From Mytilus edulis (Eukaryota), in the NCBI RefSeq assembly GCF_963676685.1, contig NC_092346.1, positions 47,554,001-47,618,000 of the forward strand: a stretch of DNA of 64,000 nucleotides. Direction: 5' to 3'. Within the stretch, counting starts at the first letter, position 1. Each line of letters begins with the position of its first letter. The notes under the pieces are model-generated. The model was not told where the DNA came from. It saw only the letters and a list, made by a program, of their open reading frames with translations, and ran no database searches. Of the stretch, positions 1,655-52,361 are shown piece after piece. Position numbers and translations under genes: made by a program.

Positions 1655-4600
1655 GTATCTCTTGTGCAAATGTGACAGTCGTTCAGCAGGTAATATGTAA
1701 ATTAAAACAGAATAAACTTATTATAGCTGACTATGCGGTATGGGCTTTGCTCATTGTTGAAGGCCGTACGGTGACCTATAGTTTTTAATGTCTGTGTCAT
1801 TTTGGTCTTTTGTGGATAGTTGTCTCATTGGCAATCATACCACATCTTCTTTTTTATATTATAGCTAGAGAAATTACCATATGTCAAATGTACCGATAGC
1901 ATATAGTGTGTAGCACCTATCAAATTAAAGCATGTGATATAAGAACATATTTAGTAAACTCAATTGCTTTACAGTATATCTTTATGGAACACCTGAAATT
2001 ACCTAGATGGTTTTTTTTTGGGGAGGGGGCGGGGGGTTCGCGTAGCTCAGTATTTTTTTGATGTTGTGTTCTGTGTACTGTTTTTTTCGTTATTGTCTTT
2101 TCTTTGTGTTTGCCATGACGTTTTAAGTTTTATTTCGACTTATGAATTTGAATGTCATTTTGGTATCTCTCGACTCTCTTTTAAAAACATATAGATCCAT
2201 TACGAACAAAAATATAGATGTTAAGTTTATGTTTGTTATTGTTTCCTATATTTGATAGTGTCTTAACGTTTCTTCAAGAAACGCTTAACTAGTAACTGTA
2301 GTTAATATAAATGCAGAACCCGGCTTTGATACATTAACCACAGTTTTTGATATATTATAGTAGGGAAACCTACAAATGTTTATAAAAGCAACAGATTGTA
2401 TTGATGTTTTTATCTCTTAAATCAATTAGGAATAGAAAAAAAATCAAGTTTACAAACGGAATATTGGGTAATCGATCGCACGAACTCATAAAATGGGTAA
2501 CAATGGTTGCATCGACAGGATAGGTTTCTTCTGCTGTACATGAAGCACCCACTGTACGAATTCAAATTTAGTGAAAGTATCACAATCGGTAAAATAACAG
2601 ACCAAACGACTTTATCAAAACTACAGATAAACAATTTTTACTAGAATCCTTTACATCAATGTTTATCAGTGCTCCATTTGAACTTGGTGTTGTGGAAGGC
2701 ATTTGGATACAAAATTGCAAACTTTACATGTTTTAACAAAATTTGCATTGAAAGAATATCGGTAATCCATTTGACAAAATACCTAGCTGTACTTCAAAAC
2801 AAATTTCAAATCGGTTAAAGGTGTTTTTCTTTTTTACTTTGGGATAATTTGTAATTTTGTAATTATTCAGGCTTTATCAATTTATGACCAATTTGGAAGT
2901 AAAGGAAATTATTTTGTTAGAACCTTTAAGTACACACATTTCGCTACATGACAGATCAAAAGAGCATTTGAAAATACCGTATAGCGGGCTATTTTCGCGG
3001 ATAGAACAAAATCGTCAAAATAAATTCCGCCAATTTAAAACGGCACATTCAAAGGTATTTATAAGGTTTTGAATCCGCCAAAATAAAAACCGGCAAAATA
3101 TTTCGTATTCCTTGTTCAATGAAAATCGCGAAATTTTACACCCGCGAAAATAACCCGCTACACGGTAGTTCTGGTGGGAAATAAGATAGAGGAGAGACCA
3201 ATTGCCCCTTATCTTTTGCTTTTTTTGTAATCATAGTCTATCATTATTTGTGTGTAAAGTAATGCCAGTACTTATAACAAAGGAAGGGAATGTCAACAGA
3301 ATGTGTTAAACATTTTTTTAAAGTCCTCGCAAATCAATTCATTAATTACTTTTACAGCAGAACAAAGTCAATATGACATTACACTCTGATCAAATTGTTG
3401 GTCTAACTTCCCCAAGAACTTCACACCTCCATACTTGCACCGGTGTTATTGGCAACCTAACGGGAGACATTAAGGTTGAAATACAGTTGGCAGGAAATGC
3501 TAACTATCAATCAATAAGTCCTAGTTATTCAACTATCACAGATACAACAGTCAACTGTGAAATTATGAGAATCCTCAAGTTTTGGATTGGATTCACTACG
3601 GCTATGTACAATGCAACTATCAGATGTCAAGTAACAAATGGTATTTTTCCTGATGCTTCGCCTAAATACTATAGCAGTGAAACTCTTCAACTTGTTTCAA
3701 GTAAGTGGGAACTCGTGTAGAATAAGAAGTATTTTTTATTAAATGAAAATAAAACAAGCAAAGAAGACCACTTCTGTGAAACCGTGAACACCTTTCACAA
3801 ACATATGGATAAATATCAGAAAAAAAAGGCTAATTCATTAATCAAAACAACTTAATTCTTTTACGACTTTGATAATTTAATAGACCCCTTAATGTCATTT
3901 GTTGTTAGACTTTTTTTTACATTTTTAAATAGGTCATATTCACCCGACTTCCCGCATATTTAAACTTGATATCAAATTACACACATACAACTTGGAATCA
4001 TTATCAAGAGTCAAAGAAGTTATACATTAAATTGACAATTTTTTTTTTTATTTAAACCAAGTTTACACATGTATCAATTCCATTGCACTTATTTTATTTT
4101 GTATTTCCATTTATCTACAACGACTACAAAAAAACACTGCAAAAATGAATATTTGGATAAATAAACGACAATACTTTTTATTTTTAACAATCCTTCCCTT
4201 TGTAAGATCATAAGTTTACAAAAGCATGTAATTCTTAAACTTAAATATGATAACCGAGGACAAAATTTCAAGGAAAAATCCTTAAAAAGTGTATTTAGAA
4301 CTACATATTGGTGTTTTAACATCCTTTTTAGATGATGTATTATAATATTCAAATGAACGATATTTTCGGGAGTTTGTAAACATATGACTTTGGAAACTAA
4401 TGTCCTGACCTTGCACGATGTGAACAGTAAAATAATTTTTTAAAAACTCCGAGGAAATTCAATACCGAACGGCCTTAATCAAAGATCAAAATCAAAAACA
4501 CATGAACTTTTTGCGTAGTGGTTTGTAATTTGCTTATTGTGTTGTTCCTCTTTCACTTTTGACATTATATTGGTAATCTCCGAATAAAAGTATTTCATTG

Positions 4601-4944
4601 AAATTTTGGATTTTTTATTGCAACTGCATGTATACCTGTGTATATCGAGCATTTTACTAGAAATACTTTCAATTTGTATATATTGCACGGAGTGTCTGCC
4701 AAGGTTTCAATTGATATTAGACTCCTGATGATCTTGTGATAACAAAACTATCATTTCAGATGACTTTTGTGAACAGAATTTAAATGGAACCATAACCAAC
4801 AAATATCATCATCCAACAACCTGTCATAGATATGTTACTTGTGAAGATAGAGCACCCTCTGTTCAAGCATGTCCAGGCAATATTTGCTTTAGTTTAGAAA
4901 AAGATTATTGTGATTATTGCTCTCATGTAAAAACTTGTCCGTAG
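1655..4944 (+). CDS. Paralog A (3' part only): Ig-like + CBM14 chitin-binding protein; exons 1655-1689, 3361-3700 (or 3358-3700), 4760-4944
   Basis: Three GT-AG exons with compatible phases (1>0, 0>1, 1>stop). Lengths 35/340/185 nt match exons 7-9 of paralog C (35/340/185) and B (35/340/179). The last exon reads NDFCEQNLNGTITNKYHHPTTCHRYVTCEDRAPSVQACPGNICFSLEKDYCDYCSHVKTCP*. Upstream exons lie before the window. Confidence 0.85.
1729..1857 (+). mobile_element. 5'-truncated SINE-like/Penelope-tail insertion with 9-bp flanking duplication
   Basis: ATTATAGCT at 1720-1728 and 1858-1866. Ends in AGTTGTCTCATTGGCA..ACCACATCTT like 38279-38421. Absent from the homologous intron of paralog C (about 49350). 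Confidence 0.7.
2975..3167. mobile_element. MITE, TA-flanked (Tc1/mariner-type non-autonomous)
   Basis: TIRs TACCGTATAGCGGGCTATTTTCGCGG / CCGCGAAAATAACCCGCTACACGGTA. Confidence 0.75.
3361..3700 (+). CDS. Paralog A exon: Ig-like domain 2
   Basis: LHTCTGVIGN...NCEIMR...MYNATIRC. Acceptor TTTACAGCAG, donor GTAAGT. Homologous to 29570-29909 and 50654-50993. Confidence 0.85.
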
Positions 4945-5076
4945 TTAAACCGACTACCTTGAAACTTGTTTGATTTTTCACATCTGTATTTATATGAACA
5001 AATTTCAATTGATGATCTTGGTTATTGTTGATCGCCTTCGAAAAATTGCAGGAGAACAAAACTATCACACTACGTA

Positions 5077-5521
5077 TAGAATCATATTCAAAACAGTGTA
5101 ACTGTGGCCATTGATTGACAACCTTAAATTATCCCATTGACTGGGGCAGATTAGGTGAACGTGTGTCTGTAACGACAACTGCTCACTACTTACTTATTAT
5201 AGAATTTAAACTGTGGGGTCACCAAAGGTTCTTAAAGCCTTTAATATTAAAATAGTTCGAAAAATTAATCAGGAATAACTTTATGTTTTGATTTATATTA
5301 TTGATATAAATCAAAACATCGTGTTTTTCCTGATTAGTTTTTCTAATTTCTTTATTTAGGTGTTGATAACCTTTTGTGACCCCACAGTTTAAGTGCCTTT
5401 AACAAGTACATAGTGAGCAGCGGTTGTTACAGCGAACGTTCACATAATCTGCCCCAGTCAATGGGATAATTTAAGGTTGTCAATCAATGGCCACAGCTAC
5501 ACTGTTTTGAATATGATTCTA
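5077..5521. mobile_element. Foldback MITE (about 445-bp near-perfect palindrome, TA ends)
   Basis: TAGAATCATATTCAAAACAGTGTA...TACACTGTTTTGAATATGATTCTA. The arms pair essentially to the centre near 5300. Confidence 0.85.
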
Positions 5522-8550: not shown

Positions 8551-8660
8551 CGACAATGTCTCAACAAAAATATATGTTGCTTTTTATTGTTTGTCAAAAT
8601 ATACTGTCAGACCGCAAGATATAGAAACCTTAAAAATAAAAGGCGATTACTAGTATATAT

Positions 8661-9770: not shown

Positions 9771-9832
9771 ATACGTCCTAGTGAAATATGCTTTAAATGT
9801 ACTATATAAATTGTTAACATCTAGTTATTAAC

Positions 9833-12420: not shown

Positions 12421-12430
12421 AACATAAAGA

Positions 12431-15266: not shown

Positions 15267-15659
15267 ATGGAGCTCCCGAAAGAGAAGATAAGTTTTGAAA
15301 AACGTAATGTTGGTGCATTCGGAAACAGTTCATACAATCAAGAGTATCATTCTCCTCCAGAATGTTGTGGGAAACAGTCAGATTTAAATGGATACTTACA
15401 ACCGATTAACGGAAACGATAATAGAATATCATCTAACCATGATTACTTGATAGTTCAGGGATCCGTAAAAAGTAATGTGCCACCTGATAAAGAGCCAGAT
15501 GAACCTCACAGCTGGCTACACCCCATGAAAAAAGAGAAAAGGGGAGATCACTGTGGAAACGAAAAGGAGTTTAGTGATCTTGATAAATGTCCATATTCAG
15601 TTATAGCAGATTCCAATATAAAGCAGCAAGACGTCAAAGCTTTTCCTCTAATAAAATAT
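15267..15659 (+). CDS. Paralog B coding exon 1: cytoplasmic Tyr-motif tail
   Basis: Homology to 36558-36899 stops at the shared Y|GTAAGT donor. The rest of track ORF 15267..15971 is intron. Confidence 0.85.
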
Positions 15660-18600
15660 GTAAGTGATATAGTAACCCATAGAATGGCGATAGGTTTGTT
15701 TTTACTAAATTATAAAAGGATTTTAAAAAAAGTCATATATCGAAAATTCTTTATGTCTTGGTTTTTTAAATTCCTATCATACTTCATATTAGACCTTTTC
15801 AACATCTCTCGACACCGACTAATGACACCTACAGTGTACAGGTTATATGGATGGGTCGTCTCAAAGACAAAAACCTTCATGATTACAAAATGTATCAATA
15901 CGTTACATATTGGATTGGCGATTATATACTGTCTTGACTATATAGCTTCAGAATATATATCAACCAAATAGATAAATAAATATATGTATCTGTCATATAT
16001 TTGTCTTATTTTGTATGTATTTACACGACATTTCATGTTAAATTGATTAAAATAAATAAAGCAACCATTCTGCATCCTGGTACGCTTCTCTTAAATTTTA
16101 TGATTATGTGAGTCTTTCACCAAATATTTGCCGCAAGTAAATAACGATTAATTTATTGGTGTAAAAGCTTTGATGAAATTTTTCAAAATTTATAAAAAAA
16201 AAAAAAGTAAATACTGGACTGTCCGTATATCCGTATCACACTTGTGAACACGACCAAATTGGTATTTTTCAACCGGTCTTCACCTTAGTTGGTGTACATA
16301 TTCAATTTCTGGATGGATAATCACATATAGATTTTGAAAGTCTAAGGAAAATACCACATCTATTTCGGTTTTTTTTTATCAACGGCGGACTTCTCCGCTT
16401 CAAGATATTTTATTAGAGTTGATGTTTTCATGATGAATTTTGAAGAAAAAAAATATAATTGACTTCTCGTTTTAATGTTACAACATCTAAACAGTACATA
16501 TTTTTTTTTACATACATGTGTAAGGAATCTATATTTCAAGTTGTTAGTTAACACTATAGGTTGCATTTCTGTAAATATTGACAATGCAATTTCCCATAGG
16601 AACTCCCTAAACGGCTAAAACTGTACCACTTTTACTATGAAGTTTTGAATAAAATCTTATCCTAGAATTGAAAGTTCATATGCACTACAATTTTTTCAAA
16701 GGTCAAAATATAGGACTATGCGGCATAATTTCAACGTTTATATGCCCTTAACTTCTCACAGTTTAAACTAACACTAATGTTCTTAACTACCCCTACCTTG
16801 AATATAAGGTTACCACAGATTTCAATATAAACAAATTACACATGTATATTTACTGGTAACATTCCCAAGTTATGTCTCTATGAGATGGAACACAGAGATC
16901 ATAACTTATGGTACCAGTATGTAAACAAAATTAATTTTCTATGAAACATCTGTATTTACAAAGTGCAACCTATAGAGCTCGTTGACATTGCAAAATCAAT
17001 ATGCTCAGTGCTAAGCAGGGGCTTGGAGACCAACGGCTGGTGTCCCGAAAACAACATACCTTTATCCCTTTGTCATAGTGTTCTTCCCCTGTTCCTAAAA
17101 TGACCTTTTGGTTTCTTACAAAAAGTTGATCAAATTTCGTTGATTTTATTTATACACCGTCATTGCTGTATTTTGTTTTGTTTTCAACGGGTCAGAATTT
17201 GTTTCTCTATATCCAATTTGCGGAACAAAGTTTTGTACCTTTTTCAGTTCTTTTTTTTTTTTCGTACTTTAAATTTTTTTATCTCATCTATGACCATACA
17301 TAAGGGATGTTTTGGATCAAAATAAGGAGAAATGGTCTGCTACATTTCCCGGAGGACTGTATTCTCCTTAGAGACAAAGTTTATCCAAATCATCATCCTT
17401 TAGTTACACCATTTACAACACCTCAAATCAATCGTAAGCCATAACATTTGAAAGAAAGAGCAGAAAATTTAATCGCGTGATTGGCGAATACAGAATTCAA
17501 GTGGAACACCAAATTGGTGAATTGAAAATAAATAAAGTATTTAGTACATTATGGAGACACACAAGGCCAAAACTAACAGACATTGTGGAAACATTGGCCG
17601 TCCTTGTCAACAGACATAAAACATTGTTTAATTAGATATCAACTACAATAAAACATGCTTTGTTCTTTTCATTTTCCAAATACCACCAGGACAGCTAGAA
17701 GCTCAACGTCTAAAAAGATCATTTTCTTTATTATTAATTAAAAAAAATCCATGTTATTTGGACTCTGTAGGAAAGTTCTATCATGGTCAATGAAAGCACT
17801 AAAATCAATACTGATTTCAATTTTTTTATTTTTTGAGACGACCCCTCTCATTTTACCTGTTGTAGTCGTTCTCAACTGTAGGTGTCAGGAGATGCCTATT
17901 ATAACAATTCATATTTATACACTTGAATAGTTATGTTTTACTATGAAACAAGTATATATATATATATATATAGATTACTAAAAAATCCAACATTTCCGGT
18001 ATGAATAGTTTTAATTCACTAGTACTTTCATGTTTAAATAACAATCTTCAGGTGAAACTATACATGATTAACGTAACTATGTAACGGTAGGTATGTAACG
18101 TCATAGTTGTCGTTGAGTATATAAAGGGAGATAAATCGTATTACACTTAGTCTATATATAGAAGTATGGAGCGTCATTATTACACAATAGAAAATGCATA
18201 GTTTGCACATTATTACACAATAGAAAATGCATAGTTTGCACATTATTACACAATAGAAAATGCATAGTTTGCACATTATTACACAATAGAAAATGCATAG
18301 TTTGCATTATTACACAATAGAAAGTGCATAGTTTGCAATTATATATATAATATATATATTCCGAAAAAGGTTTCTTTTTAGTAATGTATGCTTGTGATTT
18401 GATGCAGCTAGAAATGAAATCCTCAAACTATAAAATACTTCTTTTTGCAGTATATAGAGCATCAAATAAAGTTTTTCTATTCATTGTCGTAATGTATGCT
18501 CTTCGTGTTTTGGTATGTTATACGCTGTATTTGAAATTTATAGACATACTGTTTACTTATAGGTAGAAGGCCCACTTAACAGTCAAGAGATTGAAACACA

Positions 18601-32723: not shown

Positions 32724-32765
32724 TACCAGACCAGCGTTTCGTCTTAAAAAGACTCATCAGTGACA
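32724..32765 (-). ncRNA. Type I minimal hammerhead ribozyme motif (core intact, weak helix I)
   Basis: Minus strand UGUCA-CUGAUGA-GUC-UUUUUAA-GAC-GAAA-C-GCUG-GUC-UGGUA. Confidence 0.6.
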
Positions 32766-36557: not shown

Positions 36558-36899
36558 ATGGAGCTCCAAGACGAAAAGATGAGTTTCGATGACAGAAATT
36601 TTAGCGCATACCTTAACAGATCATACAGTGACGGGTTTTCTCCGCCTCCTGATATTTGTGGAAAACAGAGGCATTCTAATGGATATTTACACCCTTGTAA
36701 TCGTTATGAAAAGGGTATATCTTCCAACCATGATTATCTCAGTGTACAGGGATCTATCAGAGAAGAATCGCAAGTTGATAAAGTATCAAACAAACCTCCC
36801 GTCACTGATGATGATCGAATATACAATGAAATAGCAGATTCAACAAAACTTAGAACGTCTGGGCAGTCAGACGTCAATTGTTTTGACCAAAAAGAATAT
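36558..36899 (+). CDS. Paralog C coding exon 1: cytoplasmic Tyr-motif tail
   Basis: MELQDEK...NGYLHP...HDYLSVQGS...IYNEIADS...EY|GTAAGT. Confidence 0.85.
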
Positions 36900-39800
36900 G
36901 TAAGTGTTTTGCAATCATTAATGTGTGTATACATGTAACCCAAATCTTAAAAACTAAACTGTAATATCAAAAATAGGGAATACATTTCACAACGGCCTGC
37001 CATATCGAAACTTTTGATAGCTTTTTATTTTGTCTTAGTTATGCTTATTGGTGAAGGTCGTATGATAATCTAAATATACTTCATTTTCGTTTTTATGTTT
37101 CCGTTGTGTAAACTAAACAAGTTTAAGAATGATTTTCACTTAAAGAGGAAGCTTACGATATCAGAATTACCGAACGTATCATTGGAATGATGTAAAAACT
37201 GAACTGACAACTGGTTATATGGTAAGACTCGAGAGGATTAGCACCAAACATGTTTTACACGTTGCTAGAAGTCATGCGGTTGTCTTATTGATCAAATTAT
37301 GTATTTATGGTTATTCATGTGTTGTTGTTCTAAGGATAATAATCGAATGAGTTAAATATTGTTTGTTCTGATTTTTTTAAATGACTAAGATGGATTTTCC
37401 CCCTTTGTTCTCTATAAGTATCTGATCCTTGGGGAGGTCCGGGTGCAGAACTCCACTTTTTGCTAATCAACGCTTTTGATTAGGGACATATGGTTGGAAC
37501 CCCCTTTATCCATGGTTGGACCTCTTACAAAATAGCTGGATCCACCACTGTCCTCTAAAAGATCCCTTTGTAAAATAAAATCTGTTCTTAATGTATTTGA
37601 ATGGGGATGTATGGATGGAACTACCCTACCTTTATCTACGGTGAAAACCCTCCGCATTTTAATTGGTTTGAAACCCCCATTTATTTAACCGTTGTTGGAC
37701 TCCCTTTTAAAAATGACTGGGTCCGATAAAGCATTTTGTTTTATTTGCTATTTAGCGAAAATGATACTACCGCAAGACAGCTGACTGTCTTTAATTTAGA
37801 ATATCTTCTTTTTCTCGCAGCTTGAGTTATTTCAGGCTATGCTGCATTACCACAAGTTATCTGTAGATGAAATTTTTTCTATTAAGCTTTATTTTTGGCA
37901 TTTACGAATCATATAGTCGGGGTTCTAATTGTCTAGTGCCTATCCCTGGCGTATGACATAAAAAAGATAAGTTAGTAACTCCTCAAGTATGCATTATTTT
38001 TGTTGAAATATTTTGGTAAGATTTTCAATAGTTATTAGGTTTTTTTAGCATACTTTACTGCAGCTGTCACTCGTTATCCGTTTTGTTTTTTTCTATGGTT
38101 TCAATATCATCATTAACAACCATTGGTTACAGACTATTTTGGAACTTAGATTGTGTCCAATAGTTATCAAAGGTACCAGGATTATAATTTAGTACGCCAG
38201 ACACGCGTTTCGTCTACATAAGACTCATCAGTGACGCTCTTATCAAAATATTTATAAAGCCAAAACAAGTACAAAGTTTGGGGCCCTTTATAGCTTGTTG
38301 TTCGGTGTGAGCCAAGGCTCCGTGTTGAAGGCCGCACTTTAACCTATAATGGTTTACTTTTTAAATTGTTATTTGGATGGAGAGTTGTCTCATTGGCACT
38401 CACACCACATCTTCCTATATCTACAAAGTTGAAGAGCATTGAGGACCCAAAGTTCCAAAAAATTGTGCCAAATACATCTAAGGTAATCTATGCCAGGGAT
38501 AAGAAAATACTTAGTTTTTCGAACATTTCTAAAGTTTTGTAAACAGGAAATTTTAAAAAAAAAATGACCACAGTATTGATACTCATGTCAACACCGAAGT
38601 GTTGACTGCTGGGCTGGCGAACCAAATGTCCCCTTAAGCTTTAATTTAGACGAAACGCGCATCTGGCGTACTAAATTATAATTCTGGTACCTTTGATAGC
38701 TACATGTATTAACACCACTGGGTCGAAGCCACTGATGTGTGGACGTTTCGTCCTCGAGGGTATTACCAGCCCAGTAATCAGCACTTCGGAGTTGACATGA
38801 ATATCAATTATATGGTCTTTTTTATAAATTTTCGAAAAAACTAAGGATTTTCTTATCCCAGGAATAGATTACTTTAGCCATATTTGACACAACGTTTTGG
38901 AATTGTGGGTCATCAATGATCTCCAACTTTGTACTTGTTTGGCCCTATAACTATTTTTATATGAGCGTCACTGGTAAGTCTTATGTAGACGAAGCGCGCG
39001 TCTGGCGTACTTCATTACAAATCTGGTACCTTTGATAACTTTTTAATATCCATAAACTGGCAGAAAAACTTCATATTTTGCTGGTTTTGAATCCTATATT
39101 TTTTATTTTTTTTTAAATATTTGTTTAAATTAGTATAACGGCATTTAAAATAGATCCATATAAAAACCAAATTAAGGCCTTTTTGAAATTTAATGACAAT
39201 ATAACTTTTTGGCTCTCATTTTGGATTTTTTTTTCTTTTTCAAGCTATATATTGTCTCTTTCCATTCTTGAATGCTGTTTGCCATTTTAGATATTTAATT
39301 GTAGGTACTTGGACCAGCAGATGACTACTGCTTGCCGCAAGACAAAGAAGCAAATAAACCATCTGCAAATTCTCCTTGTTCTCCCTGTAGAATGATTATT
39401 CTTGCTGCAATAATAATAATACTCCTGATTGGCCTTGGCTGTGCAGCTTATTTCTTATGGCTTAGAAATACCAATGAAAGTTTGTTTAATTTAAATTGTT
39501 AGCTCGTATCCAAAGCTGAAACGTGTACTGATAACATTTTTACCTACAGTATAACGTTTCCTAATACTTAGTAAATTTAATTCAGGTTCAGTTAATTTTT
39601 AATGAACAAAAAACTTTTTTATTGATATGCTATTCCAACAAACTTTAAATCAGTAGAATTTTTGTAGGGTTTTTCAATTGTTACTGGTGAATTTTTAATG
39701 AGTTTGTATAAAATTCCTGAATAATATATATCCGTGTACGTATAAAGACAAATAATTGACGATAATGTACTTAAATATTTATATATTGTTTATAAATTGA

Positions 39801-42800
39801 AGGAAAAAAACAAAACAGATCATGCGTCTTAAATTTCCCTTCTAGATCCATCTTCATTTAGAACGTTTAAACTTAAAAAAATTAAAAGCAAGGTAATAAA
39901 TTCAAATATGAAAACGTACGTGTGCGTGTACCATGTTTCAACTGGTTAAAATAGGCATGGATAATTTTCAGTTTAAACAAATCTATGTGTAATATTAGTA
40001 TACTGTTTTATTATTTAGTATACGTCACAAATTGGACATTTTAAAGCTTTTGAATATCTAATGTAACTATTCGGTTACAGTTTACTGAATGACAAACTAT
40101 ATTTTTAAAGGTTGATTGAAATGAAATATCCGAATATTCAGACAAATAAATAAACGCATACATTATTTTGATATATAAACCAATGACATGCTTCTGTACT
40201 ATTCTTATTCGAGACTCACCTTTAGTTTCCTCTTTATCATTCGTCTTTGAACGTTAAAAAGGGACGTCAGAAGTAATTAATTCTACAGAAAAGGAGAGGA
40301 CATTTTAATGACATACTGGCGAATAAAAAAAAGCTTTTTGTACACTCCAGTTCTAACAAATATTTCTTAAAATATAAATGATAGGTGATTTGGTATATAA
40401 GTAAATATTACAGCATGTCGCCAATACGGAAACCTTAAAGTCAAAGGTTGTCAATGAACGGCTTTCAACGATATGCAGAAGATCCATATATCTAGATTAT
40501 CACACATTTTCCACTAACACAAATTTTGATAAAATAACAAATTAAGATGAAACACAAACATAAACGAAGTAACAGGTTAGGGGGTCGAAGGACACATTAC
40601 CTAATACTGGGTTGCACTACTTTTGTTTAGACCTCAACCCGTTTCGTGTTTAAATTGGACCAGTGAAATTATACAAAATACATTGTATCTATTTTGAAGA
40701 GTGTTCAGTCAGTAATTACACTTTATCAATTTGTAATGTCTATTGCTATCATACATTTGTAATAGATACATTTACTGCAATTCCTTTCAATATTTGACAA
40801 ATGTAAAACATTTCAATTGAAAAAACGATACATTGCAACAAATGACATTAACTTAATTTAAAGAATGTGGCTGCGTTAAACATTTATACGGGTATCTAAT
40901 CTCGCCCTAATCTAGGGAAAGTGATGTAAAAGCACAAAATAAGAACAAGTTATATAACTAAGTTTAAAAATCTTCGCCAGTTTTGTAACATGGAACGTAT
41001 AAATTATGAATCGTGTTGGTCTTCATTTTTATGATTTAATTTTCATTTAACTAAATTTTGAACACGTAGTTACTTTAGGAAGGGCACTAAAAATGAATAC
41101 TAGATTGAAACGAAGGAGTGTCATGAACATCACTTTTAACCAAAATAAACGTAATAGTGTGTGCTATCTGGTATGTTATATTTCAGATGAGAAAACTGAT
41201 ACATTAAACAACACCCAGCATAGTATTACGTCAACGATTGTATCAAGTACATTTAGAACACTAATATTTAGTACAGAAGCGCAAACGGATACCCTTACAA
41301 ATCCAGCTTCTACGCTTACGACATCAACCGATCAGGTTTTATCAACTACAAAAGGTACGTTTTTCATGTAGAGCCAAAACTGTTGACATGCAAAAGAAAA
41401 GTGATCGGCTTCTCTTCTTCTTTCGTTGCTGTCTTATACTTATTAAAAACATGCGACGTTGCCTTACTTTGATGTAAGTACAAAATATAAATCATATTCA
41501 CATTTCGCATGTATAACCACATTTTCCTTTAGCTCTCACCCCATATGGAATTTACTGACCAAATTTAATCCGTATTAGGTCACTAGCACACTATGTAACT
41601 AATAAAGTATCGCTAATCTATCATGGAATATACATGGCCTCCACACGGTTGCTTTTAACCATTCATATTCCTAGAAATGTATAGGAATTAAGATAATATA
41701 TTTTGTTAATCCTCAGATGTGTTTTATTTTCCATTCAGAGAGTAGCCCGTCAGAAGCACCAAGTTCAACTACGGAAATCTACTGTAAGTACTTTATTGCA
41801 TAAAAAAAATAGTGAACGAAACTGTATACATAATTACAGAAGGACGTTGGAAAATAGTTTGTAAAGAAAATTCAATGTAAAGTATTGGGTATATTGTCAT
41901 TTTCCCTTTCTGTTGTTTTTTTTCTATTTTAAAAGGTAAGGTTATCAAATATTATCTCACGTCTGTTAATGATTCTCTTGGTAGATGATTGTCGCTGATG
42001 AGGAAATATTGACCCAAATATTCTCAATGTACATTTGAAGACATCTTTTTGGGAAATATTAAGGCCAATATTATGATTAGTTAACTGTTTTGAGTTGTAT
42101 ATGTCACATATGACCACTAAATTGTAACACTTGTACAGTCTGTCTGATATATTGTAATGACTTGGCCAAGCGAAATTCCTTGGCAAACATGTGTATTTTC
42201 ATGTCGAGCACCTGTTATCGCCTATGATTCGATGTTTGGCTATTTTAAAGTTTGACACCGGTTCTCACCTTTTTAATTCAATTCATTATGTTTTCAGTGT
42301 TCTATGTAATCCGTTTTCCAAGTGTAAAACCATTTTTATTGTTGTATAAACGAGATAACTTTTGTAGTAAACTTTCACTTTCACTTCAGTCGCCATTTCC
42401 GGCACAATGATTTTAGTGTATTGATTATGCAAATGAGGTGACCTGTGAGTAACCTCAGTGAACTTTATGTACCACTAGCGTAAAACAGTGTATGAATACT
42501 ACAGCGCCGTAGATTGATTATTCCAGGATTATTGTATTAAAACGATATTGTTGGTGATTGTAAATGATACTAAGATGATTTTTATGTTCCGTAAACATGT
42601 TGTTTACGTTTTTATGTACTTAATTCTAGCAATCGGGGATTATTTTCGTTCTTGTCAGGCCCGTTCACAGTTCCCCGTTCGTTTTCCCGTTAAGAACCGT
42701 TCGTTGCCCCGATAGCTTCATCGGGGTATAAAAGGCTTGCACCCGTTCATCAGGGGCTCTTCCTACTTTGTCAGACCTACGGAGATGTTGCCAGATTTTC

Positions 42801-45800: not shown

Positions 45801-48800
45801 GTTGTTGGTCTTTTTAAAGAAGGTTGTAAATAAGTCAATTTCAATTTGTGTTTTCTTGGGGTTTTTTTTTTTTTTTTTTTTTGTGTTTTTCTTTTACTAA
45901 TTATGAAGAGTACTTAAATCCAAAACATGATTTCTTTCGTTTACACCATAAAGGTTCACCTACTGATAGAATCATTTTTCAACTCAATCCTGATCAAATA
46001 GCTGACCCGGAAGTTAGCAGAAATTTGTTGCCGCACACTTGCGAAGCCTACGTTGGTTACCCTGCAGGAGACATAAGCATTGAGATTTTGAAGTCAGGAG
46101 AGCAAGAGTTCAGAAAACTAGATGTTATCATTGAGAGCACAGTGGACAACAGGACGTCATGCGAAATACATAGAAAAATAGTATTTAGAATAGTATTTAC
46201 ATCTGATATGGAGAAGGCTATCATCAGATGTTCAGTAATTAATAAACACTTCCCAGATTCTCCAGCCTTTTATTCAAAAAATGAAACAGTTCGTCTAATA
46301 CCAGGTAAATATCACTTGTTTATTGTTGTGAATATGGACTTCAGTTGAACCTAATAAATCTTTATCCTTATTCTTACTAATAACTATTTTTATTTTACCG
46401 TTTATCAAAATAATATTGCGTTTTATGTAAATAAACTTATTGTTAAAGAGGCGGTAGCTGTCAAATTATGTTCACCGTTTTGACTCAAATTCCCAACTTT
46501 TGGTTTATAGCATACTAAATATTATATACAAATTATGAAAAATCTAAAATAAGCAATTTACAATGCATTGGATTGAATATATTTATTAGCATTTAGTGTG
46601 AATTCTAGTCTAGATGAATTTTCGGCTTTCCCTTAAAACCATTTGCGAGTAAGGTCTTAAGAAAGATTGATATTCCGTCGGAGGGGGACGATAAATGGCT
46701 GACCCGTGCAAGTGAAACCATATCTCTTGCACGTAAACGACACTCTTGTTGATTTCGAAAAAGTGAAGGCTTATGTCCCTACAATGCTGCATTTGAATCC
46801 ACAAAGTGGAATGGGATTAATATAAGTTGAAATAACTTGTTTCCAAATCCACTTTTTATAGATATGTTAAAACTAAAAATAATCTAATGACATGAAAAGC
46901 TGCATAAAAACATATGAAAATTAAAATAAAAAAAATAATGCATATTGGTTTTTTTATAACTAAATGGCTAGTTTTAATTATAGAACTCGTAAACTAATTA
47001 TTTTATTATTTTCTGAAGACAACTCTTTAACTTTTCAAAATTTAGAAGAAGTGTACATTTTTGAGATTGGTAGATGTAGGCCAATAATTCGCCGGCATAT
47101 TTGCCGTATGTATTTACTAGTGAATTTTCACGTTAAACTCCGAAAATAACAATAAGCAAGTTTGGAGGGGTAAACCAGATTAGTAGAGATATTCAACAAG
47201 CGTAAACATCGCTCCGTCATTCAAAAAATGTATATATCTCATTATCGCTATTTTACGAAATTTTTCTTTCATCTTACTGAGTGATAATTTCTTTTCTCAG
47301 CGGACTCTAGTGATATGGGAAAAAAATCGCTAGAAACTAAGGGGGCACATGGCGTTGTGAATGAGATTTCATAGAAATTGACAACGTCGTCATAGGTACA
47401 ATTTGCGATTATCATTGGTCATCTTAACTCGATTGCTTTTCTTACTTTTGCCGTACCGACTAAAGCGAGAGAATCAATCTCGTTGTGATGATCAACGATA
47501 ATCTATAATTATACATGTTGAAAAGATGATTAAGTTTATGATATATGCATGCATTGGTTCAAGAATTATCCGTATTTTTCACAATGCAAACACGCCAAAA
47601 TAAAATATCATCAGATTAACGCCATCGGTATTTGGTATGCTATTTGTTTAATCTTATTATGAAGCGATACAAACTACTGTGAATGCATATAAATAAAAGA
47701 AACAGAACAATACCGAATACGTTTTTGCAGGTGTGATTAAATGCCCGACTCTTAAACAGTTTGAATTGTCGTTCTTTGAATAGATTACGTCCAATAATTC
47801 ATCACGCAATGTAAGTGAAGAATTCACTATTTGATCAACTCATATCAAAAAGCTGTGTATGTATATTTACAGCAGTAAAATCATTTCAGGTGATTCGTGT
47901 AAAGATAACACTGTATCCCAAAGCAACCGTGTACATCCTACAAACTGTAAATATTATATTGAATGCCAGAACAAAGAACCCTATGGTCGTGCATGTCAGT
48001 ACGGCTATTGTTTTGGAATATACACAGTAGAAACATGCACTCCTTGCAATGATGTTACATGTCCAGCAACAAGTAAGAAAGTGTTCGCATAAGGAAAACA
48101 TATTTAAAATGTGGTAATGAATAAAAACACTATGCATTATTTTAGAAAATTTCAACTGAGTTTTAATTATCATTTGAAAGCGCAGATATATGTTGGACGT
48201 TCTTTTCAATGTTATATCAATTATTTCCGAAATGCAAAAAAAAATCCAATGAAGAACAAATTACATTCAAATATCCAGAAGTTAAAAGACAATAGACATA
48301 GCAATATTTTTTAAGATTCAGACTTAAAATGTGGAAGGTTTTCAAATTTCAATTAAAGATAGATGTAAAAACAAATATCTAAATTAAATGTGTACAATGT
48401 CAATTTCAACTTTTTCCTTTTTTAATATACTTTATATTTATTTCGTTTTGAGCATCACTGAAGAGACAAAAATTGTAGAAGTTCGCATTAACTGCAGTAT
48501 CAAAAATACCTTTCATTGTATTAGCTATATAAAATAGTAGAAGTCGTATAATAAGATACTTATCCCATATGCAGAGACGACATGATGTTGATAAGATAGA
48601 CTATAGGTCATTGTTTGTCCTTGAACAATTGACAAAACATTGCCACATAAGATACCGATAAAAAGGCCACACAAAATTAAATTTAAATGAAAACGCGAAC
48701 GAGTTATTTTAAGCCAGATTACATTAAACAAATATGGCATATATTAACCAATGAAATAAAGTCCCCTGACTTGAAACCGGCCCAAATAATTTTATGCTGT

Positions 48801-51800
48801 AAAACGTGTTAGCAAGTGCTAAACCTTTGAAAGTTATTAAACAGCACAACATATGTACAAAGTTTATAAAAATCAGTTTAAAATGGCTTGAAAAATTTAA
48901 TCGGCTCTTAAAACACGAAAAACAACAAAAGACACAAAATACCAACAAAAGATTCAGCAGTTACTGAAAGCTAGTTTTGTGTTTTGTAAATTGATATTTT
49001 AATCTTTAGCTTGTTAATAACAAATCTTGTTGATATCATGCATTTTCTAATTTTCATTGGTGATATATGGAAATGGAAAGAAATAGTGAATTTACTCCAA
49101 TTCATAGATTTTATTTTATGCCCTTCAGAACCAGTAAGACGCAAAAATATCAAGTAACTGCTGTATGCCACAGAATAGGACATAAATGTATTTGAATAAA
49201 CGATGTTTAATTTGTGATCTTCACCATATCATGACAAAAAAATATTAATGTATTATTATAGAAAATTTTATTTCCCTTCAAAGGTAGCTCCTGCACAAAT
49301 ACGACTGTTGTTCAGAAGGTAATATAATAAAATTTAAAAGATATAGAACTTATTTGAAAGAAAGATGACCATATATCAAAAGAAAACACTTTTTAAACTT
49401 GTATCAATAGCAAATAGTTTTAAATCAAACCAAACAAAAGCATCTAAGCAGATGTTAACGAAACATAGGTTTGATATACTGAAGCAAATTGACCAGTTTC
49501 GAAACAATTAATATGTAAATTCTATATAAAGTATACTACATTAACAAAAAAACATCTTTCAATTCCTTAACACATATTTAATTCTTTTATCAGAGATAAT
49601 CAATAAGCATCTCATTCTGTAATTTTAAAAAGAAAGGCAGACAGTAGTTTCGATACATGCTACAGTTGTTCACATGCAGAAACAAGCTCACAATAAGCAA
49701 TTTTAATTCACTATGTTAAGGAGTATGGACGACTTCCCTTGACTTGATTTTATAACACTCACAATATCAAAATCATTGTCAATTCTTACTTGAAAATGAG
49801 TATAAGAACGTGTTTACTAAGGCAACAGTTATCAAATCTCAGAAGACGATTAAAAAAATCATGATAAACACTGAAGAAACGGCATGAACTCAAAAAGGAG
49901 AAAACCCGGGTGCGCATACAAGGTCAGCGTCCGCAGCTATATATACTACATCATCCGCAGCTATATATACTACATCATCCGCAATTCGAATCTACACTAA
50001 GTCAAAATGTCAAAAACGGTAAAATTATAGAACAGACGACTTTACTGTTGTATATATAAAAACATCAATGTATAGCTTAGGTTGAACAATGTTGAACTCC
50101 AATGTTATGTATAAACAATATTAAGATAAATACTACTTGTATCTATGATGAGATTATTTGAAACCTGTTCATACATTAATTAACAAAAACTGATCTGTTG
50201 ATTATTTTCATTTATTCAATATGTGGTTCATTTGATATCAGTTTGCCATTGGTTAAAATTCGATATGACCTCAAATTGTCTAGCTTTTTTTCTGAAATTT
50301 TTATTCAGAAGTTATGAAAAAGACGATCCTGCCTGATGACGTCACAATGATGAGATCATTCGAAAAGAATGATTTCGTCTCAAATCCATTAGAGAAACAG
50401 ATTTCACCAAAAAATCTGGTGCAATACGTTCAATATCCAGTATCAACACATAAATTTAAATATGTAAAATGCTTGGCCAACCTCGCGGTTTAAATGTGAA
50501 AATTTAAATCTCCAGTAGATAAATGTCGCATCACACTTGGTACAGTGGTATAACCTTTATGTAACAGTAATGGAGAAAGACTATTTTGAAAACTGTTTAG
50601 TTCAAAGTAATATTGTAATGTTCTTGAAATTATTTTTATTCCTTTTACAGCAGAACAAAGTCAATATGACAATACATTCTGATCAGGTTGCTGGGCTGAC
50701 TTCCACAAGAGCTTCAAATCTACATAGTTGCTCTGGTTTAATTGGCAATCTAACGGGTGACATACAAGTTCAAATACAGTTGGCAGGGAATAATAATTAC
50801 CAAACAATCATTCCTAGCTATACAACCAAAGTAGATACAACAGAAAACTGCGAATTAAAAAGAGTTCTCAAGTTTTGGATTGGATTCACTGTGGATATGT
50901 ACAATGCAACCATTAGATGTAGAGTAAAAAACGGCTTTCATCCGGATGTTTCGCCGATCTACTCTAACAGTGTAACTCTTTACCTGGTTTCCAGTAAGTA
51001 GATGTTCATAAATAATAATTTGTATATTGCATCAAAATTAAAATAAAACAAGCAAAGACGGCCGTTTCGTTTAAACCGATAAGGCCTTTCCGAAACTTTT
51101 GAATGAATAAAAGCAAAACAAGCGTTGCTACTTTTACGGGGGGCATTGTGGTCGATGGATTTTTTTTATCAACATTCTTGCCCTGACTAACGAAAAACAC
51201 CATGCCTAAGACAAAATGAAAATAAATAATCTGCCCCAATTACTGGAGAACATATTCCCATACCATCCCGTCTCATTGATATGCTCCCAACAAAGTAGAA
51301 CAGAAACTACAGAATTATATTCTTTCAATATACCCGAGAGAACACGTTTGTCTGCGTAGCGGTTTGTTATATGCGGGTTTTAGAATTTAGAATAAATAAT
51401 GATAATAATAAAATATCTCATTAAGCGAAAGAAAATCGTTTAACAAGAACATGTTTATCTTTTCTGCCATCAAAACTAATTATACTAAATAGAAATGTAC
51501 AAACAAATAAAACACGTAAATTACAGTTAACAAAATAAAGCAGCTTCAATTGAATAAGCACACATGCATTAAATGAAAGAAATACATATAAATAATACTT
51601 AGGATTCAGTTATCGTCATTCTGTAAAGTTAAACAATCATTGAACTATGTGAGATTGATTTTACTTTTCAGATTTGTTTCATCATTAATAAAAGAGGGAC
51701 GAAAGATACCAGAGGGACAGTCAAACTCATAAATATAAAATAAAATGACAACGCCATGGCTAAAAATTAAAAAGACAAACAGACAAACAATAATACACAT

Positions 51801-52361
51801 GACACAATATAGAAATCTAAAGAATAAACAACACGAACCCTACCAAAAACTAGGGGTGATCTCGGGTGCTCCGGAAGGGTAAGCAGATCCTGATCCACTT
51901 GTGGCACTCGTCGTGTTGCTTATGTGATAACAAATCCGGTAAATGGTCTTATTCGGTAGGTCACATTTATGAAAGGGAAGGGGATTGCAGTTACGACGTA
52001 AGGAACATATCCGATATCATTTGTGAAACGGTTATGTCATAACGGTCAACCAACTCGTGATAAATGTACATATGTATCTTGTACTAGTTATTCTTGCAAG
52101 TTGTAGAACTTTGTCTACTTACAGTTAATATATATTTTCCTCATGTTCTTATGATATTGTTAAACTTTCATTTCAGGTGACTTTTGTAACCAGAATTTTA
52201 ACAGCACCATAACCAACAAATATCATCATCCAACAACCTGTCATAGATTTATTTCTTGTGTAGGGAATGCACCTTACGTCCATACATGCTCGAGTGGTCT
52301 TTGCTTTAGTTTAAAAGAGGATCGTTGTGAATATTGCAATCTGGTAAAAACATGTCCGTAA
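36558..52361 (+). CDS. Paralog C: type II transmembrane protein, (Ig-like + CBM14)x2, about 607 aa
   Basis: Exons 36558-36899, 39305-39479 (TM), 41187-41354, 41739-41783, 45954-46304 (Ig1), 47890-48072 (CBM1), 49284-49318, 50654-50993 (or 50651-50993; Ig2), 52177-52361 (CBM2, TAA). Total 1824 nt, open. Exon lengths 45/351/183/35/340 are identical to B. AATAAA at 52520. Confidence 0.85.
38194..38237 (-). ncRNA. Type I minimal hammerhead ribozyme (intact core)
   Basis: Minus strand GCGUCA-CUGAUGA-GUC-UUAUGUA-GAC-GAAA-C-GCGU-GUC^UGGCGU. Helix I is 6 bp, helix II 3 bp, and the short helix III has a self-complementary loop. Confidence 0.85.
38279..38421 (+). mobile_element. 143-bp SINE-like/Penelope-tail insertion inside the retrozyme, 9-bp TSD
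   Basis: TACAAAGTT at 38270-38278 and 38422-38430. The sequence is the reverse complement of 54730-54872. Confidence 0.85.
39305..39479 (+). CDS. Paralog C exon 2: transmembrane/signal-anchor (not in ORF track)
   Basis: VLGPADDYCLPQDKEANKPSANSPCSPCR-MIILAAIIIILLIGLGCAAYFLWL-RNTNE. Confidence 0.8.
42153..43978 (+). mobile_element. Probable solo LTR (Gypsy-type), 1826 bp
   Basis: TG...CA ends; imperfect terminal inverted repeat TGTAATGACTTGGCCAAGCG / CGTTTGGCCAGTTATTACA; 4-bp TSD ATAT (42149-42152, 43979-43982); TATAAAA at 42727; no long ORF. Confidence 0.65.
43979..44440 (+). mobile_element. Penelope-like 3' fragment
   Basis: Decayed RT C-terminus (..FYGRNHEMVDRYGITVSQI) plus the common tail. 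Confidence 0.75.
44960..45435 (+). mobile_element. Penelope-like 3' fragment
   Basis: DRGLLLTRKLLNQEFQMVKLK..GRHHESVDRYGITVSQMISDMFLTS* plus tail. It is preceded by a retrozyme remnant (about 44790-44938). Confidence 0.8.
45954..46304 (+). CDS. Paralog C exon 5: Ig-like domain 1
   Basis: HTCEAYVGYPAGDISIEI...DMEKAIIRC. Confidence 0.85.
47407..47503. repeat. Imperfect hairpin, probably part of a non-autonomous element
   Basis: GATTATCATTGGTCATC...GATGATCAACGATAATC. Confidence 0.55.
47890..48072 (+). CDS. Paralog C exon 6: CBM14-like domain 1
   Basis: DSCKDNTVSQSNRVHPTNCKYYIECQNKEPYGRACQYGYCFGIYTVETCTPCNDVTCP. Confidence 0.85.
49930..49983. repeat. 24-bp tandem duplication
   Basis: TCCGCAGCTATATATACTACATCA x2 plus TCCGCA. 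Confidence 0.9.
50654..50993 (+). CDS. Paralog C exon 8: Ig-like domain 2
   Basis: Homologous to the A and B exons; CAGCAG acceptor. Confidence 0.85.
51689..52061 (-). mobile_element. Penelope-like 3' fragment
   Basis: Reverse complement of 45063-45435. Confidence 0.85.
52177..52361 (+). CDS. Paralog C exon 9: CBM14-like domain 2 and stop
   Basis: DFCNQNFNSTITNKYHHPTTCHRFISCVGNAPYVHTCSSGLCFSLKEDRCEYCNLVKTCP*. Confidence 0.85.

What the first reader, a model, noticed from the sequence alone, without database searches (positions are those of the whole stretch)
1655..52361. Tandem family of type II membrane receptors with (Ig-like + chitin-binding CBM14)x2 ectodomains: a membrane-anchored VCBP-like system
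Seen: three paralogs with matching exon sizes and phases. The complete ones (B, C) have no signal peptide, a Tyr-rich N-terminus, basic residues before a single TM helix, an S/T stalk and N-glycosylation sequons after the TM, then Ig-CBM-Ig-CBM. Known: Ig plus chitin-binding domain defines the secreted VCBPs of amphioxus and Ciona (V-V-CBD), and type II topology with a Tyr-motif tail is the design of Dectin-1-type glycan receptors. Inference: this array combines the two and may be an independently assembled chitin/GlcNAc-polymer sensing receptor family (immunity, gut matrix or shell surveillance). I do not recognise this architecture as a named family. The ORF track hides it because it is split over 9 exons.
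Basis: partly seen in the sequence, partly recalled or inferred. Interest (0 to 1): 0.9.

Follow-up and report, generated by a model that had tools for sequence, protein, structure and literature searches.

The report
Mussel membrane-anchored Ig plus chitin-binding receptors
The window holds three neighbouring mussel genes for single-pass membrane proteins that display two antibody-like (Ig) domains, each followed by a chitin-binding domain; they belong to a Mytilus-only gene cluster that public databases list only as 'uncharacterized', and their function is still untested.

Summary
Genes B (15267-31042) and C (36558-52361) each have nine coding exons with canonical AG/GT sites and identical phases. 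Gene A's last three exons start at 1655; its other exons lie upstream of the window.

Gene B's exons tile a public Mytilus edulis protein (621 aa) with one mismatch. Gene C is collinear with a M. galloprovincialis RefSeq model.

The proteins have no signal peptide, one TM helix at about residues 150-180, a Ser/Thr-rich stalk and then (Ig-like + CBM14) x2. The C-terminal CBM14 passes Pfam's threshold. The Ig-like domain has no Pfam hit, but it folds confidently (pLDDT 96) into an Ig sandwich closest to the C-type second domains of Lutheran/BCAM, RAGE and CD166 (Z about 11). It is not V-type.

The family is larger than three. About seven genes with this cytoplasmic tail, one of them a pseudogene, sit in a roughly 540-kb cluster of 33 such Ig-like domains. 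The Ig-like-to-CBM14 pair recurs across bivalves, including in the neighbouring giant gene D.

'VCBP-like' and 'Dectin-1-like' are analogies, not memberships; vertebrate FIBCD1 is the nearest design.

The parts
1655..1689 (+). Gene A exon 7 (35-nt mini-exon, linker with a Cys, phase 1->0)
   Evidence: AG/GT sites and frame. It matches the linker segment in RefSeq models P0002/P0076.
3358..3700 (+). Gene A exon 8: Ig-like domain 2, with a tandem CAG|CAG acceptor
   Evidence: It is 95% identical to M. edulis RefSeq XP_071162985.1 (P0082).
4760..4944 (+). Gene A exon 9: CBM14 domain 2 and stop codon
   Evidence: Pfam CBM_14 at 24.1 bits against a cut-off of 22.1; boundaries.
15267..15659 (+). Gene B exon 1: start codon and cytoplasmic tail carrying the conserved Tyr motifs
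   Evidence: Tiles P0087 residues 1-131 with 1 mismatch; motifs.
18563..18725 (+). Gene B exon 2: juxtamembrane C-S-R-C-K and TM helix (about 18638-18706)
   Evidence: Kyte-Doolittle 19-residue window peaks at 3.0.
19608..19784 (+). Gene B exon 3: Ser/Thr-rich stalk with N-glycosylation sequons
21931..21975 (+). Gene B exon 4: 45-nt mini-exon (Ser/Thr/Pro linker, phase 1-1)
23494..23844 (+). Gene B exon 5: Ig-like domain 1 (phase 1-1)
27083..27265 (+). Gene B exon 6: CBM14 domain 1
   Evidence: Pfam CBM_14 at 15.4 bits, sub-threshold. Homologous to the CBM2 copies at E 1e-11 to 1e-13. Boundaries.
28731..28765 (+). Gene B exon 7: 35-nt mini-exon (linker with a Cys)
29570..29909 (+). Gene B exon 8: Ig-like domain 2 (the domain that was folded)
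   Evidence: AF2 pLDDT 96.1. VIA Z 11.1 to Lutheran d2, 10.9 to RAGE C1 and 10.8 to CD166 d2. Boundaries.
30864..31042 (+). Gene B exon 9: CBM14 domain 2 and stop codon
   Evidence: Pfam CBM_14 at 31.6 bits; boundaries.
36558..36899 (+). Gene C exon 1: start codon and cytoplasmic tail
39305..39479 (+). Gene C exon 2: C-S-P-C-R and TM helix (about 39392-39463)
41187..41354 (+). Gene C exon 3: Ser/Thr-rich stalk
41739..41783 (+). Gene C exon 4: 45-nt mini-exon
45954..46304 (+). Gene C exon 5: Ig-like domain 1
47890..48072 (+). Gene C exon 6: CBM14 domain 1
   Evidence: Pfam CBM_14 at 17.9 bits, sub-threshold; boundaries.
49284..49318 (+). Gene C exon 7: 35-nt mini-exon
50651..50993 (+). Gene C exon 8: Ig-like domain 2, with a tandem CAG|CAG acceptor
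   Evidence: RefSeq isoforms X1/X2 of the M. galloprovincialis counterpart differ by one Gln exactly here.
52177..52361 (+). Gene C exon 9: CBM14 domain 2 and stop codon
   Evidence: Pfam CBM_14 at 32.3 bits; boundaries.
59124..59774 (+). Gene D exon 1 (context): acidic cytoplasmic N-terminus of a large neighbouring type II protein that carries the same Ig-like+CBM14 modules beyond the window
   Evidence: 73% identical to M. coruscus CAC5391878.1 (P0080) residues 1-217.
60517..60750 (+). Gene D exon 2 (context): TM helix
   Evidence: P0080 has a hydropathy peak at residues 248-259.

Best explanation
The window is part of a roughly 540-kb cluster on a Mytilus edulis chromosome. It holds three tandem members (A in part, B and C complete) of a Mytilus-restricted family of single-pass type II membrane glycoproteins.

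Shown:
- nine-exon genes under purifying selection
- an N-terminal cytoplasmic tail of about 150 aa, with no signal peptide and five conserved Tyr-containing motifs
- a juxtamembrane Cys pair and one TM helix
- a Ser/Thr-rich, sequon-rich stalk
- two units of a C-type Ig-like domain fused directly to a CBM14 (peritrophin-A) domain.

Inferred:
- The C-terminal part is extracellular and held away from the membrane on an O-glycosylated stalk.
- The CBM14 domains keep the family's Cys framework and aromatic positions, so they bind chitin or related GlcNAc polymers. The Ig-like domains act as spacers or as a second binding surface.
- Clustering by a polymeric ligand is read out through the tail's YxxPhi motifs (D-Y-L-x-V, and an acidic cluster followed by R-I-Y-x-E-I). 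The read-out would be either AP-2-type endocytosis or phagocytosis, or tyrosine phosphorylation with SH2 docking.
- The most likely role is a cell-surface receptor for chitin-bearing particles such as fungi, parasites and microalgal food. In design it is closest to vertebrate FIBCD1.

My odds: about 0.9 for the architecture and topology, about 0.6 for chitin as the ligand, and about 0.35 for endocytic or signalling coupling through the tail.
For: Gene models. Gene B equals public protein P0087 in 620 of 621 residues. Gene C is collinear with RefSeq XP_076098972.1.

Topology. Every full-length member has one hydrophobic segment at about residues 150-180 and none at the N-terminus. In gene B, sequons and 24 Cys lie C-terminal of the TM.

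CBM14. Pfam hits above threshold. A profile of the six copies hits squid chitin-binding beak protein 3, a chitinase CBM and Avr4 in the PDB.

Ig fold. AF2 gives pLDDT 96.1 and pTM 0.85. All Foldseek hits are IgSF. VIA Z is 11.1, 10.9 and 10.8 over about 100 of 110 residues.

Constraint. dN/dS is 0.18-0.32 for most Ig and CBM exon pairs, with CBM2 A-C at 0.59.

Tail. Its motifs are conserved across ten Mytilus proteins, and one paralogue has the Y-S-V-I motif in three tandem copies. The tail exon occurs only in front of Ig/CBM exons, at 7-8 loci, all in this cluster.

Precedent. The type II chitin-receptor design exists in FIBCD1 (PMC6888979).
Against: The internal CBM14 copies are below Pfam's threshold.

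The positive-inside bias around the TM is weak. Topology therefore rests mainly on the missing signal peptide and the extracellular-type C-terminal domains.

The Tyr motifs fit no canonical ITAM, ITIM or hemITAM exactly.

I saw no hypervariability of the kind expected for diversified immune receptors.

The multidomain ectodomain model was poor (pLDDT 50), so the domain arrangement is unknown.
Confidence: 0.5

Rival explanations
1. Structural anchor. The proteins tie epithelial cells to the animal's own chitinous matrices (shell or periostracum framework, gastric shield or similar) and act as adhesion molecules rather than sensors.
For: CBM14 proteins are common matrix components in molluscs; the PDB profile search hits squid chitin-binding beak protein 3. 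The Ig-like domain is closest to adhesion-molecule domains of BCAM, CD166 and nectins, and one weak sequence hit is auto-named ALCAM. Evolution is purifying rather than diversifying. The neighbouring relative D combines the module with SEA, mucin and TSP1 matrix-type domains.
Against: A long cytoplasmic tail with motifs this well conserved, triplicated in one paralogue, is more than a passive anchor needs. A tandem birth-and-death family with a recent pseudogene is more typical of environment-facing receptors. There are no expression data either way.
Confidence: 0.25
2. Shed or mucus-associated chitin binder. The TM segment acts mainly as a signal-anchor, and the ectodomain is released to work like VCBPs or peritrophins in mucus or the gut lumen.
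For: It has a mucin-like stalk and tandem CBM14 domains, as peritrophins do. The relative D carries a SEA domain, which is typically an autoproteolytic shedding module.
Against: A, B and C have no SEA domain and no recognisable cleavage module. The conserved 150-aa tail would be pointless for a protein that is simply shed.
Confidence: 0.1
3. The CBM14-like domains no longer bind chitin. They serve as disulfide-rich protein-interaction modules, and the family is a lineage-specific cell-cell recognition system.
For: The internal CBM copies score below Pfam's threshold. All copies carry an extra Cys pair relative to the six-Cys consensus.
Against: The C-terminal copies pass the threshold. The conserved H-P-T-x-C ... 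aromatic ... C and C-F motifs of chitin-binding type-2 domains are kept in all six copies.
Confidence: 0.1
4. Annotation artefact. The tail and TM exons belong to a different transcript from the Ig/CBM exons, so the models are chimeric.
Against: The same exon order, strand and compatible phases recur at seven loci. The tail exon is never found elsewhere in the genome. Independent annotations in M. edulis, M. galloprovincialis, M. californianus and M. coruscus join the same exons. Without the TM exon the Cys-rich ectodomain would have no route into the secretory pathway.
Confidence: 0.03

Closest known systems
[quoted passage not shown]
   Same: Ig-superfamily domains are combined with a peritrophin-type chitin-binding domain, and the genes form a multigene family (PMC2632668, PMC4008424, listed).
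   Different: VCBPs are secreted, with two N-terminal V-type domains and one C-terminal CBD. Here the proteins are type II membrane proteins with C-type Ig-like domains alternating one-to-one with CBM14. They have a conserved cytoplasmic tail and are confined to bivalves. The resemblance is convergent, not homologous.
FIBCD1 (vertebrate chitin-binding receptor)
   Same: It is a type II transmembrane protein with a C-terminal domain that binds acetylated polymers such as chitin, and it sits on epithelial cells facing microbes (PMC6888979). This is the nearest design-level analogue.
   Different: The binding domain is fibrinogen-related, not CBM14. There are no Ig domains. It is a single gene rather than a tandem family, and the tail is unrelated.
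Dectin-1 / CLEC-2 type hemITAM receptors
   Same: Type II topology, a stalk, a glycan-binding ectodomain, and a single YxxPhi motif downstream of acidic residues in the tail.
   Different: There is no C-type lectin domain. The motif is acidic cluster-x-R-I-Y-x-E-I, or C-P-Y-S-V-I in B, rather than DEDGYxxL. Syk coupling is untested.
Second (C-type) Ig domains of BCAM/Lutheran, RAGE and ALCAM/CD166
   Same: These are the best structural matches to the Ig-like domain: Z 10.8-11.1, rmsd 2.3-2.5 A over 99-101 of 110 residues. The Cys positions fall in strands B and F.
   Different: Sequence identity is only 10-18% and there is no Pfam Ig hit. A third conserved Cys and a linker Cys are present. The rest of the architecture is unrelated.
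Peritrophins and molluscan CBM14 matrix proteins (e.g. squid chitin-binding beak protein 3, Pif/BMSP)
   Same: CBM14 domains with the conserved Cys and aromatic framework and an associated mucin-like region.
   Different: Those proteins are secreted matrix components with a signal peptide. They have no TM helix, no cytoplasmic tail and no Ig partner domain.
Large bivalve V-set Ig / Ig-like / CBM14 proteins (gene D here; M. coruscus CAC5391878.1; Pecten, Argopecten, Potamilus, Mercenaria and Sinanodonta models)
   Same: They carry the same Ig-like domain fused directly to CBM14. Gene D is also type II and lies next door.
   Different: They are much longer and add SEA, mucin, TSP1 and V-set domains. 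Their cytoplasmic tail is different, and they are also uncharacterised.

Membership tests
VCBP | Two N-terminal V-type immunoglobulin domains | tested here: not met
   There is no V-set Pfam hit. The best fold matches are C-type second domains of BCAM, RAGE and CD166. Each CBM has one Ig-like domain.
VCBP | Single C-terminal chitin-binding domain of peritrophin type | tested here: inconclusive
   CBM14 is present and C-terminal (31.6 and 32.3 bits). However, there are two copies, three in one paralogue, interleaved with the Ig domains.
VCBP | Secreted protein with a signal peptide | tested here: not met
   No N-terminal hydrophobic segment, and a single internal TM at about residues 150-180.
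CBM14 / chitin-binding type-2 (peritrophin-A) | Pfam PF01607 match above the gathering score, with the conserved Cys framework | tested here: met
   The C-terminal copies score 24.1-32.3 bits against a cut-off of 22.1. The internal copies score 15.4-17.9 bits but are homologous to them at E 1e-8 to 1e-13. PDB profile hits go to CBM14 proteins.
CBM14 / chitin-binding type-2 (peritrophin-A) | Actual binding to chitin | not testable with these tools
   This needs a recombinant-domain pull-down.
Immunoglobulin superfamily | Two-sheet beta sandwich with Cys in strands B and F | tested here: met
   AF2 pLDDT 96.1. All top Foldseek and VIA matches are Ig domains, with Z up to 11.1. Cys23 lies in strand 21-28 and Cys86 in strand 83-89. 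The disulfide itself is inferred.
Type II (signal-anchor) membrane protein | No cleavable signal peptide, one TM helix, C-terminus outside | tested here: met
   Hydropathy, sequon and Cys distribution support this. Orientation is inferred from extracellular-type domains, because no dedicated topology predictor was available.
hemITAM receptors (Dectin-1, CLEC-2) | C-type lectin-like ectodomain | tested here: not met
   No exon gives a lectin_C hit.
hemITAM receptors (Dectin-1, CLEC-2) | Cytoplasmic DEDGYxxL-type motif that recruits Syk | tested here: inconclusive
   The conserved motif is D-D-x-R-I-Y-x-E-I, or C-P-Y-S-V-I in B. It is acidic upstream, but the spacing and the +3 residue differ. 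Syk binding was not testable.
FIBCD1-type chitin receptor | Fibrinogen-related acetyl-binding domain | tested here: not met
   No fibrinogen_C hit. The resemblance is one of design only.

The most novel reading that the evidence does not exclude
Mytilus evolved its own membrane-bound chitin-sensing receptors. Tandem C-type-Ig/CBM14 ectodomains on a mucin stalk would couple, through an acidic-cluster YxxI (hemITAM-like) tail, to Syk-type signalling or phagocytosis. That would be a third, independent solution beside Dectin-1 and FIBCD1. It would be built from a bivalve-wide V-set/C-type Ig/CBM14 module that is itself convergent with the VCBPs of protochordates.
Probability: 0.15. Interest if true: 0.8.

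Novelty: new variant of a known kind. Interest (0 to 1): 0.55.

Why it matters
Chitin is a major non-self and food-particle signature for filter feeders, yet no membrane receptor for it is known in molluscs.

This family gives a concrete, testable candidate. It has a defined ectodomain to express, conserved tyrosines to mutate, and a compact gene cluster with an in-cluster pseudogene and copy variation to follow in populations.

It also shows that pairing an Ig domain with a peritrophin-type chitin-binding domain, so far known from protochordate VCBPs, arose separately in bivalves and is widespread there. That bears on how innate recognition modules are assembled again and again by exon shuffling; the Ig and CBM14 domain exons here are all phase 1-1 except Ig2 (0-1).

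If the proteins prove to be plain matrix anchors, the finding is an ordinary lineage-specific expansion.

Tried and rejected
Splice joins therefore rest on canonical sites, phases, conservation and public gene models only.

2. Whole-ectodomain structure. I folded P0001 (380 aa) with an 8-row alignment. Mean pLDDT was 50.3 and pTM 0.34, which is unusable for domain packing.

3. Pfam on the Ig-like exons and the cytoplasmic tail gave nothing meaningful, even at E up to 1. The ESM Atlas had no usable look-alike for the tail.

4. Diversifying selection. Nei-Gojobori dN/dS between paralogues is 0.18-0.32 for most Ig and CBM exon pairs, with one CBM2 pair at 0.59. Per-site entropy is about equal in strands and loops: 0.77 against 0.75 for Ig2, and 0.53 against 0.68 for Ig1. 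I found no V-like hypervariable loops. Both are crude tests.

5. Literature. Searches for VCBP plus bivalve, 'VCBP-like', chitin-binding type-2 plus Ig-like plus mussel, ChtBD2 plus IgSF, and Mytilus plus haemocyte terms found no description of this architecture. The search for type II chitin-binding receptors turned up FIBCD1.

6. Joined model. Exons were searched one at a time by reference. Full-length analyses used public proteins returned by the tools (P0087, P0002, P0076). Inside scripts, exon translations, carrying the split codons across junctions, were only compared with those proteins.

7. I rejected the idea that gene A is a truncated paralogue. Its upstream exons exist outside the window.

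Full report
WHAT IS THERE

The window has 31-33% G+C and no N runs. It is G000:C3:47554001-47618000 of a 1.37-Gb genome. The contig length of 107,021,180 bp equals that of the Mytilus edulis RefSeq records that carry family members, so the organism is M. edulis.

A self-comparison of all open frames on the + strand shows three sets of paralogous exons. I read the splice sites directly and fitted the exons to public proteins.

- Gene B: 15267-15659, 18563-18725, 19608-19784, 21931-21975, 23494-23844, 27083-27265, 28731-28765, 29570-29909, 30864-31042. All have AG/GT sites. Together they tile P0087, an M. edulis 'unnamed protein product' of 621 aa, with a single mismatch.
- Gene C: 36558-36899, 39305-39479, 41187-41354, 41739-41783, 45954-46304, 47890-48072, 49284-49318, 50651-50993, 52177-52361. 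It has the same phases and encodes 608 aa. It is collinear with M. galloprovincialis XP_076098972.1 (P0002) at 79-93% identity per exon.
- Gene A contributes only exons 7-9 to the window (1655-1689, 3358-3700, 4760-4944). Its tail, TM, stalk, Ig1 and CBM1 exons lie 16.3 to 0.8 kb upstream. Together they correspond to M. edulis XP_071162985.1.

THE PROTEIN

I analysed the full-length protein on P0087, the public product of gene B, and on its relatives.

- There is no hydrophobic N-terminus.
- One TM segment lies at residues 157-179, preceded by C-S-R-C-K.
- The following 80 residues are 43% Ser+Thr.
- Ten sequons lie after the TM and one before it.
- The C-terminal part holds 24 Cys.

This supports a type II (N-in, C-out) layout. 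The orientation is inferred from the missing signal peptide and the extracellular-type domains, because the charge bias at the helix is weak.

The C-terminal chitin-binding exons pass Pfam CBM_14 (31.6, 24.1 and 32.3 bits against a cut-off of 22.1). The internal copies score 15.4 and 17.9 bits but are homologous to the C-terminal ones. A profile of the six copies finds squid chitin-binding beak protein 3, a chitinase CBM and Avr4 among solved structures.

The two domains of about 110 aa have no Pfam hit. With a 39-sequence alignment, AlphaFold2 gives pLDDT 96.1 and pTM 0.85. Every Foldseek match is an Ig domain, although E is only about 1e-3. An exhaustive structural alignment puts the second, C-type domains of Lutheran/BCAM (Z 11.1), RAGE (Z 10.9) and CD166 (Z 10.8) on top, at rmsd 2.3-2.5 A over about 100 residues. 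It is an Ig domain, but not a V domain.

THE TAIL

Ten Mytilus family members share five features in the cytoplasmic tail:

- N-x-S-Y
- G-Y-L-Q-P
- D-Y-L-x-V-Q-G-S
- an acidic cluster followed by R-I-Y-x-E-I (C-P-Y-S-V-I in B)
- a terminal Y-V at the exon 1 boundary.

One paralogue repeats the Y-S-V-I block three times. The tail exon occurs only at 7-8 loci, all inside this cluster and all upstream of Ig/CBM exons. The ESM Atlas has no look-alike for it. The motifs are YxxPhi-type. They could be endocytic signals or SH2 docking sites, but they fit no canonical ITAM, ITIM or hemITAM.

THE FAMILY AND ITS ORIGIN

The own-genome search finds 33 copies of the Ig-like domain, all between 47.10 and 47.64 Mb of this chromosome.

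Among 1.84 billion representative proteins, only 73 match the domain profile at E <= 0.001. All named ones are bivalve: Mytilus spp., Pecten, Argopecten, Mizuhopecten, Ylistrum, Pinctada, Tegillarca, Potamilus, Sinanodonta and Mercenaria.

A search with a full-length Mytilus member (P0076), limited to proteins of similar length, returned 16 protein clusters, all from Mytilus. Some of them are partial models; I did not check the tail and TM in every one. One paralogue has three Ig-CBM units.

Local HMM mapping shows that the Ig-like domain is followed immediately by a CBM14 in proteins of many bivalves. In some models where Pfam V-set was run, a V-set domain lies just upstream.

The next gene downstream (D) starts at 59124 and continues about 26 kb past the window. 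It is one of these: acidic tail, TM, a region that matches SEA in a related M. galloprovincialis model (not detected by Pfam on this exon), mucin, TSP1 repeats (about seven by homology to P0080; Pfam run on one), then three units, each a V-like exon (only the third has even a weak Pfam V-set hit) followed by the Ig-like domain; the second and third units also have a CBM14. The short genes thus look like derivatives of an older bivalve module rather than a fresh assembly.

Paralogues A, B and C differ by dS of mostly 0.4-1.2 (TM-exon comparisons excluded), with dN/dS of 0.18-0.32 in most Ig and CBM exon pairs (CBM2 A-C 0.59). Variation is not concentrated in loops.

One cluster member, at 47.5106-47.5315 Mb, carries four in-frame stops in this assembly. 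Its close counterparts are intact in M. galloprovincialis and in another M. edulis assembly. This is birth-and-death evolution.

HOW IT MOST LIKELY WORKS

Shown: the gene models, the domain identities and the single TM.

Inferred: a stalked surface protein whose CBM14 domains bind chitin-type polymers, and whose tail couples clustering to uptake or tyrosine-based signalling.

The main rival is a passive anchor to the animal's own chitinous matrices. Shedding, loss of chitin binding, and a chimeric gene model are less likely.

COMPARISON WITH WHAT IS KNOWN

It is not a VCBP: those are secreted V-V-CBD proteins. It is not a Dectin-1-type receptor: it has no C-type lectin domain. The nearest design is FIBCD1, a type II chitin-binding receptor with a fibrinogen-related domain (PMC6888979).

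I found no paper that describes this architecture. Databases list the proteins as uncharacterized. I rate it a new variant of a known kind.

LIMITS

The only indirect hint is that RefSeq isoforms X1 and X2 of the C counterpart differ by one Gln exactly at the tandem CAG|CAG acceptor of exon 8.
- The multidomain fold failed.
- I did not submit my own joined spliced model to any search tool. Exons were searched by reference, and full-length work used public proteins returned by the tools.

Noticed in passing
window 59124-64000, continuing to about window +89880 (loci L003-L005): Gene D is a large type II protein: acidic tail, TM, a region that matches SEA in a related M. galloprovincialis model (not detected by Pfam on this exon), mucin, TSP1 repeats (about seven by homology to P0080; Pfam run on one), then three units, each a V-like exon (only the third has even a weak Pfam V-set hit) followed by the Ig-like domain; the second and third units also have a CBM14. 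It is orthologous to M. coruscus CAC5391878.1 and M. californianus XP_052103565.1. It is probably the ancestral-type relative of genes A-C.
   Followed up: partly
window 63136-64000, continuing to about +68850 (L003): A DIRS-like retrotransposon lies inside an intron of gene D. It has a zinc-knuckle gag-like ORF, RVT_1, RT_RNaseH, a Dam-like methyltransferase region and a DUF3435 (recombinase-like) ORF. I only observed it.
   Followed up: partly
G000:C3:47510560-47531460 (loci L006-L008), about 22-43 kb upstream of the window: This family member carries four in-frame stops: one in the tail exon, two in Ig1 and one in Ig2. It has also lost the Tyr of the Y-S-V-I motif. It is otherwise about 82-95% identical per exon to the intact M. 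galloprovincialis LOC143066523. It looks like a recent pseudogene, possibly polymorphic between haplotypes.
   Followed up: partly
TM exons: gene A (window -13995..-13840) against gene C (39314-39469): The TM exons of A and C are 87% identical (dS 0.09), while all other exon pairs have dS 0.4-1.2. This suggests gene conversion or a mosaic origin for the 5' part.
   Followed up: no
window 3877-3951 (+), inside gene A intron 8: A short relic resembling the start of the cytoplasmic-tail exon: 56% identity over 25 aa to gene C exon 1, including N-R-S-Y-S. It is probably left over from a partial duplication.
   Followed up: no
window 8701-9138 (+) and 56152-56610 (-): Two related ORFs with reverse-transcriptase-like motifs (Y-I-D-D-type) sit in the A-B and C-D intergenic regions. 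Pfam gives no hit at E <= 0.01. They are probably decayed retroelement fragments.
   Followed up: partly
G000:C3:47411243-47411803: In this paralogue the tail exon carries the acidic C-P-Y-S-V-I-A-D block in three tandem copies. It corresponds to M. edulis RefSeq protein P0098.
   Followed up: partly
window 3355-3360 and 50648-50653: The exon 8 acceptor is a tandem CAG|CAG (NAGNAG) site in genes A and C. This matches the one-Gln difference between RefSeq isoforms X1 and X2 in M. galloprovincialis.
   Followed up: partly
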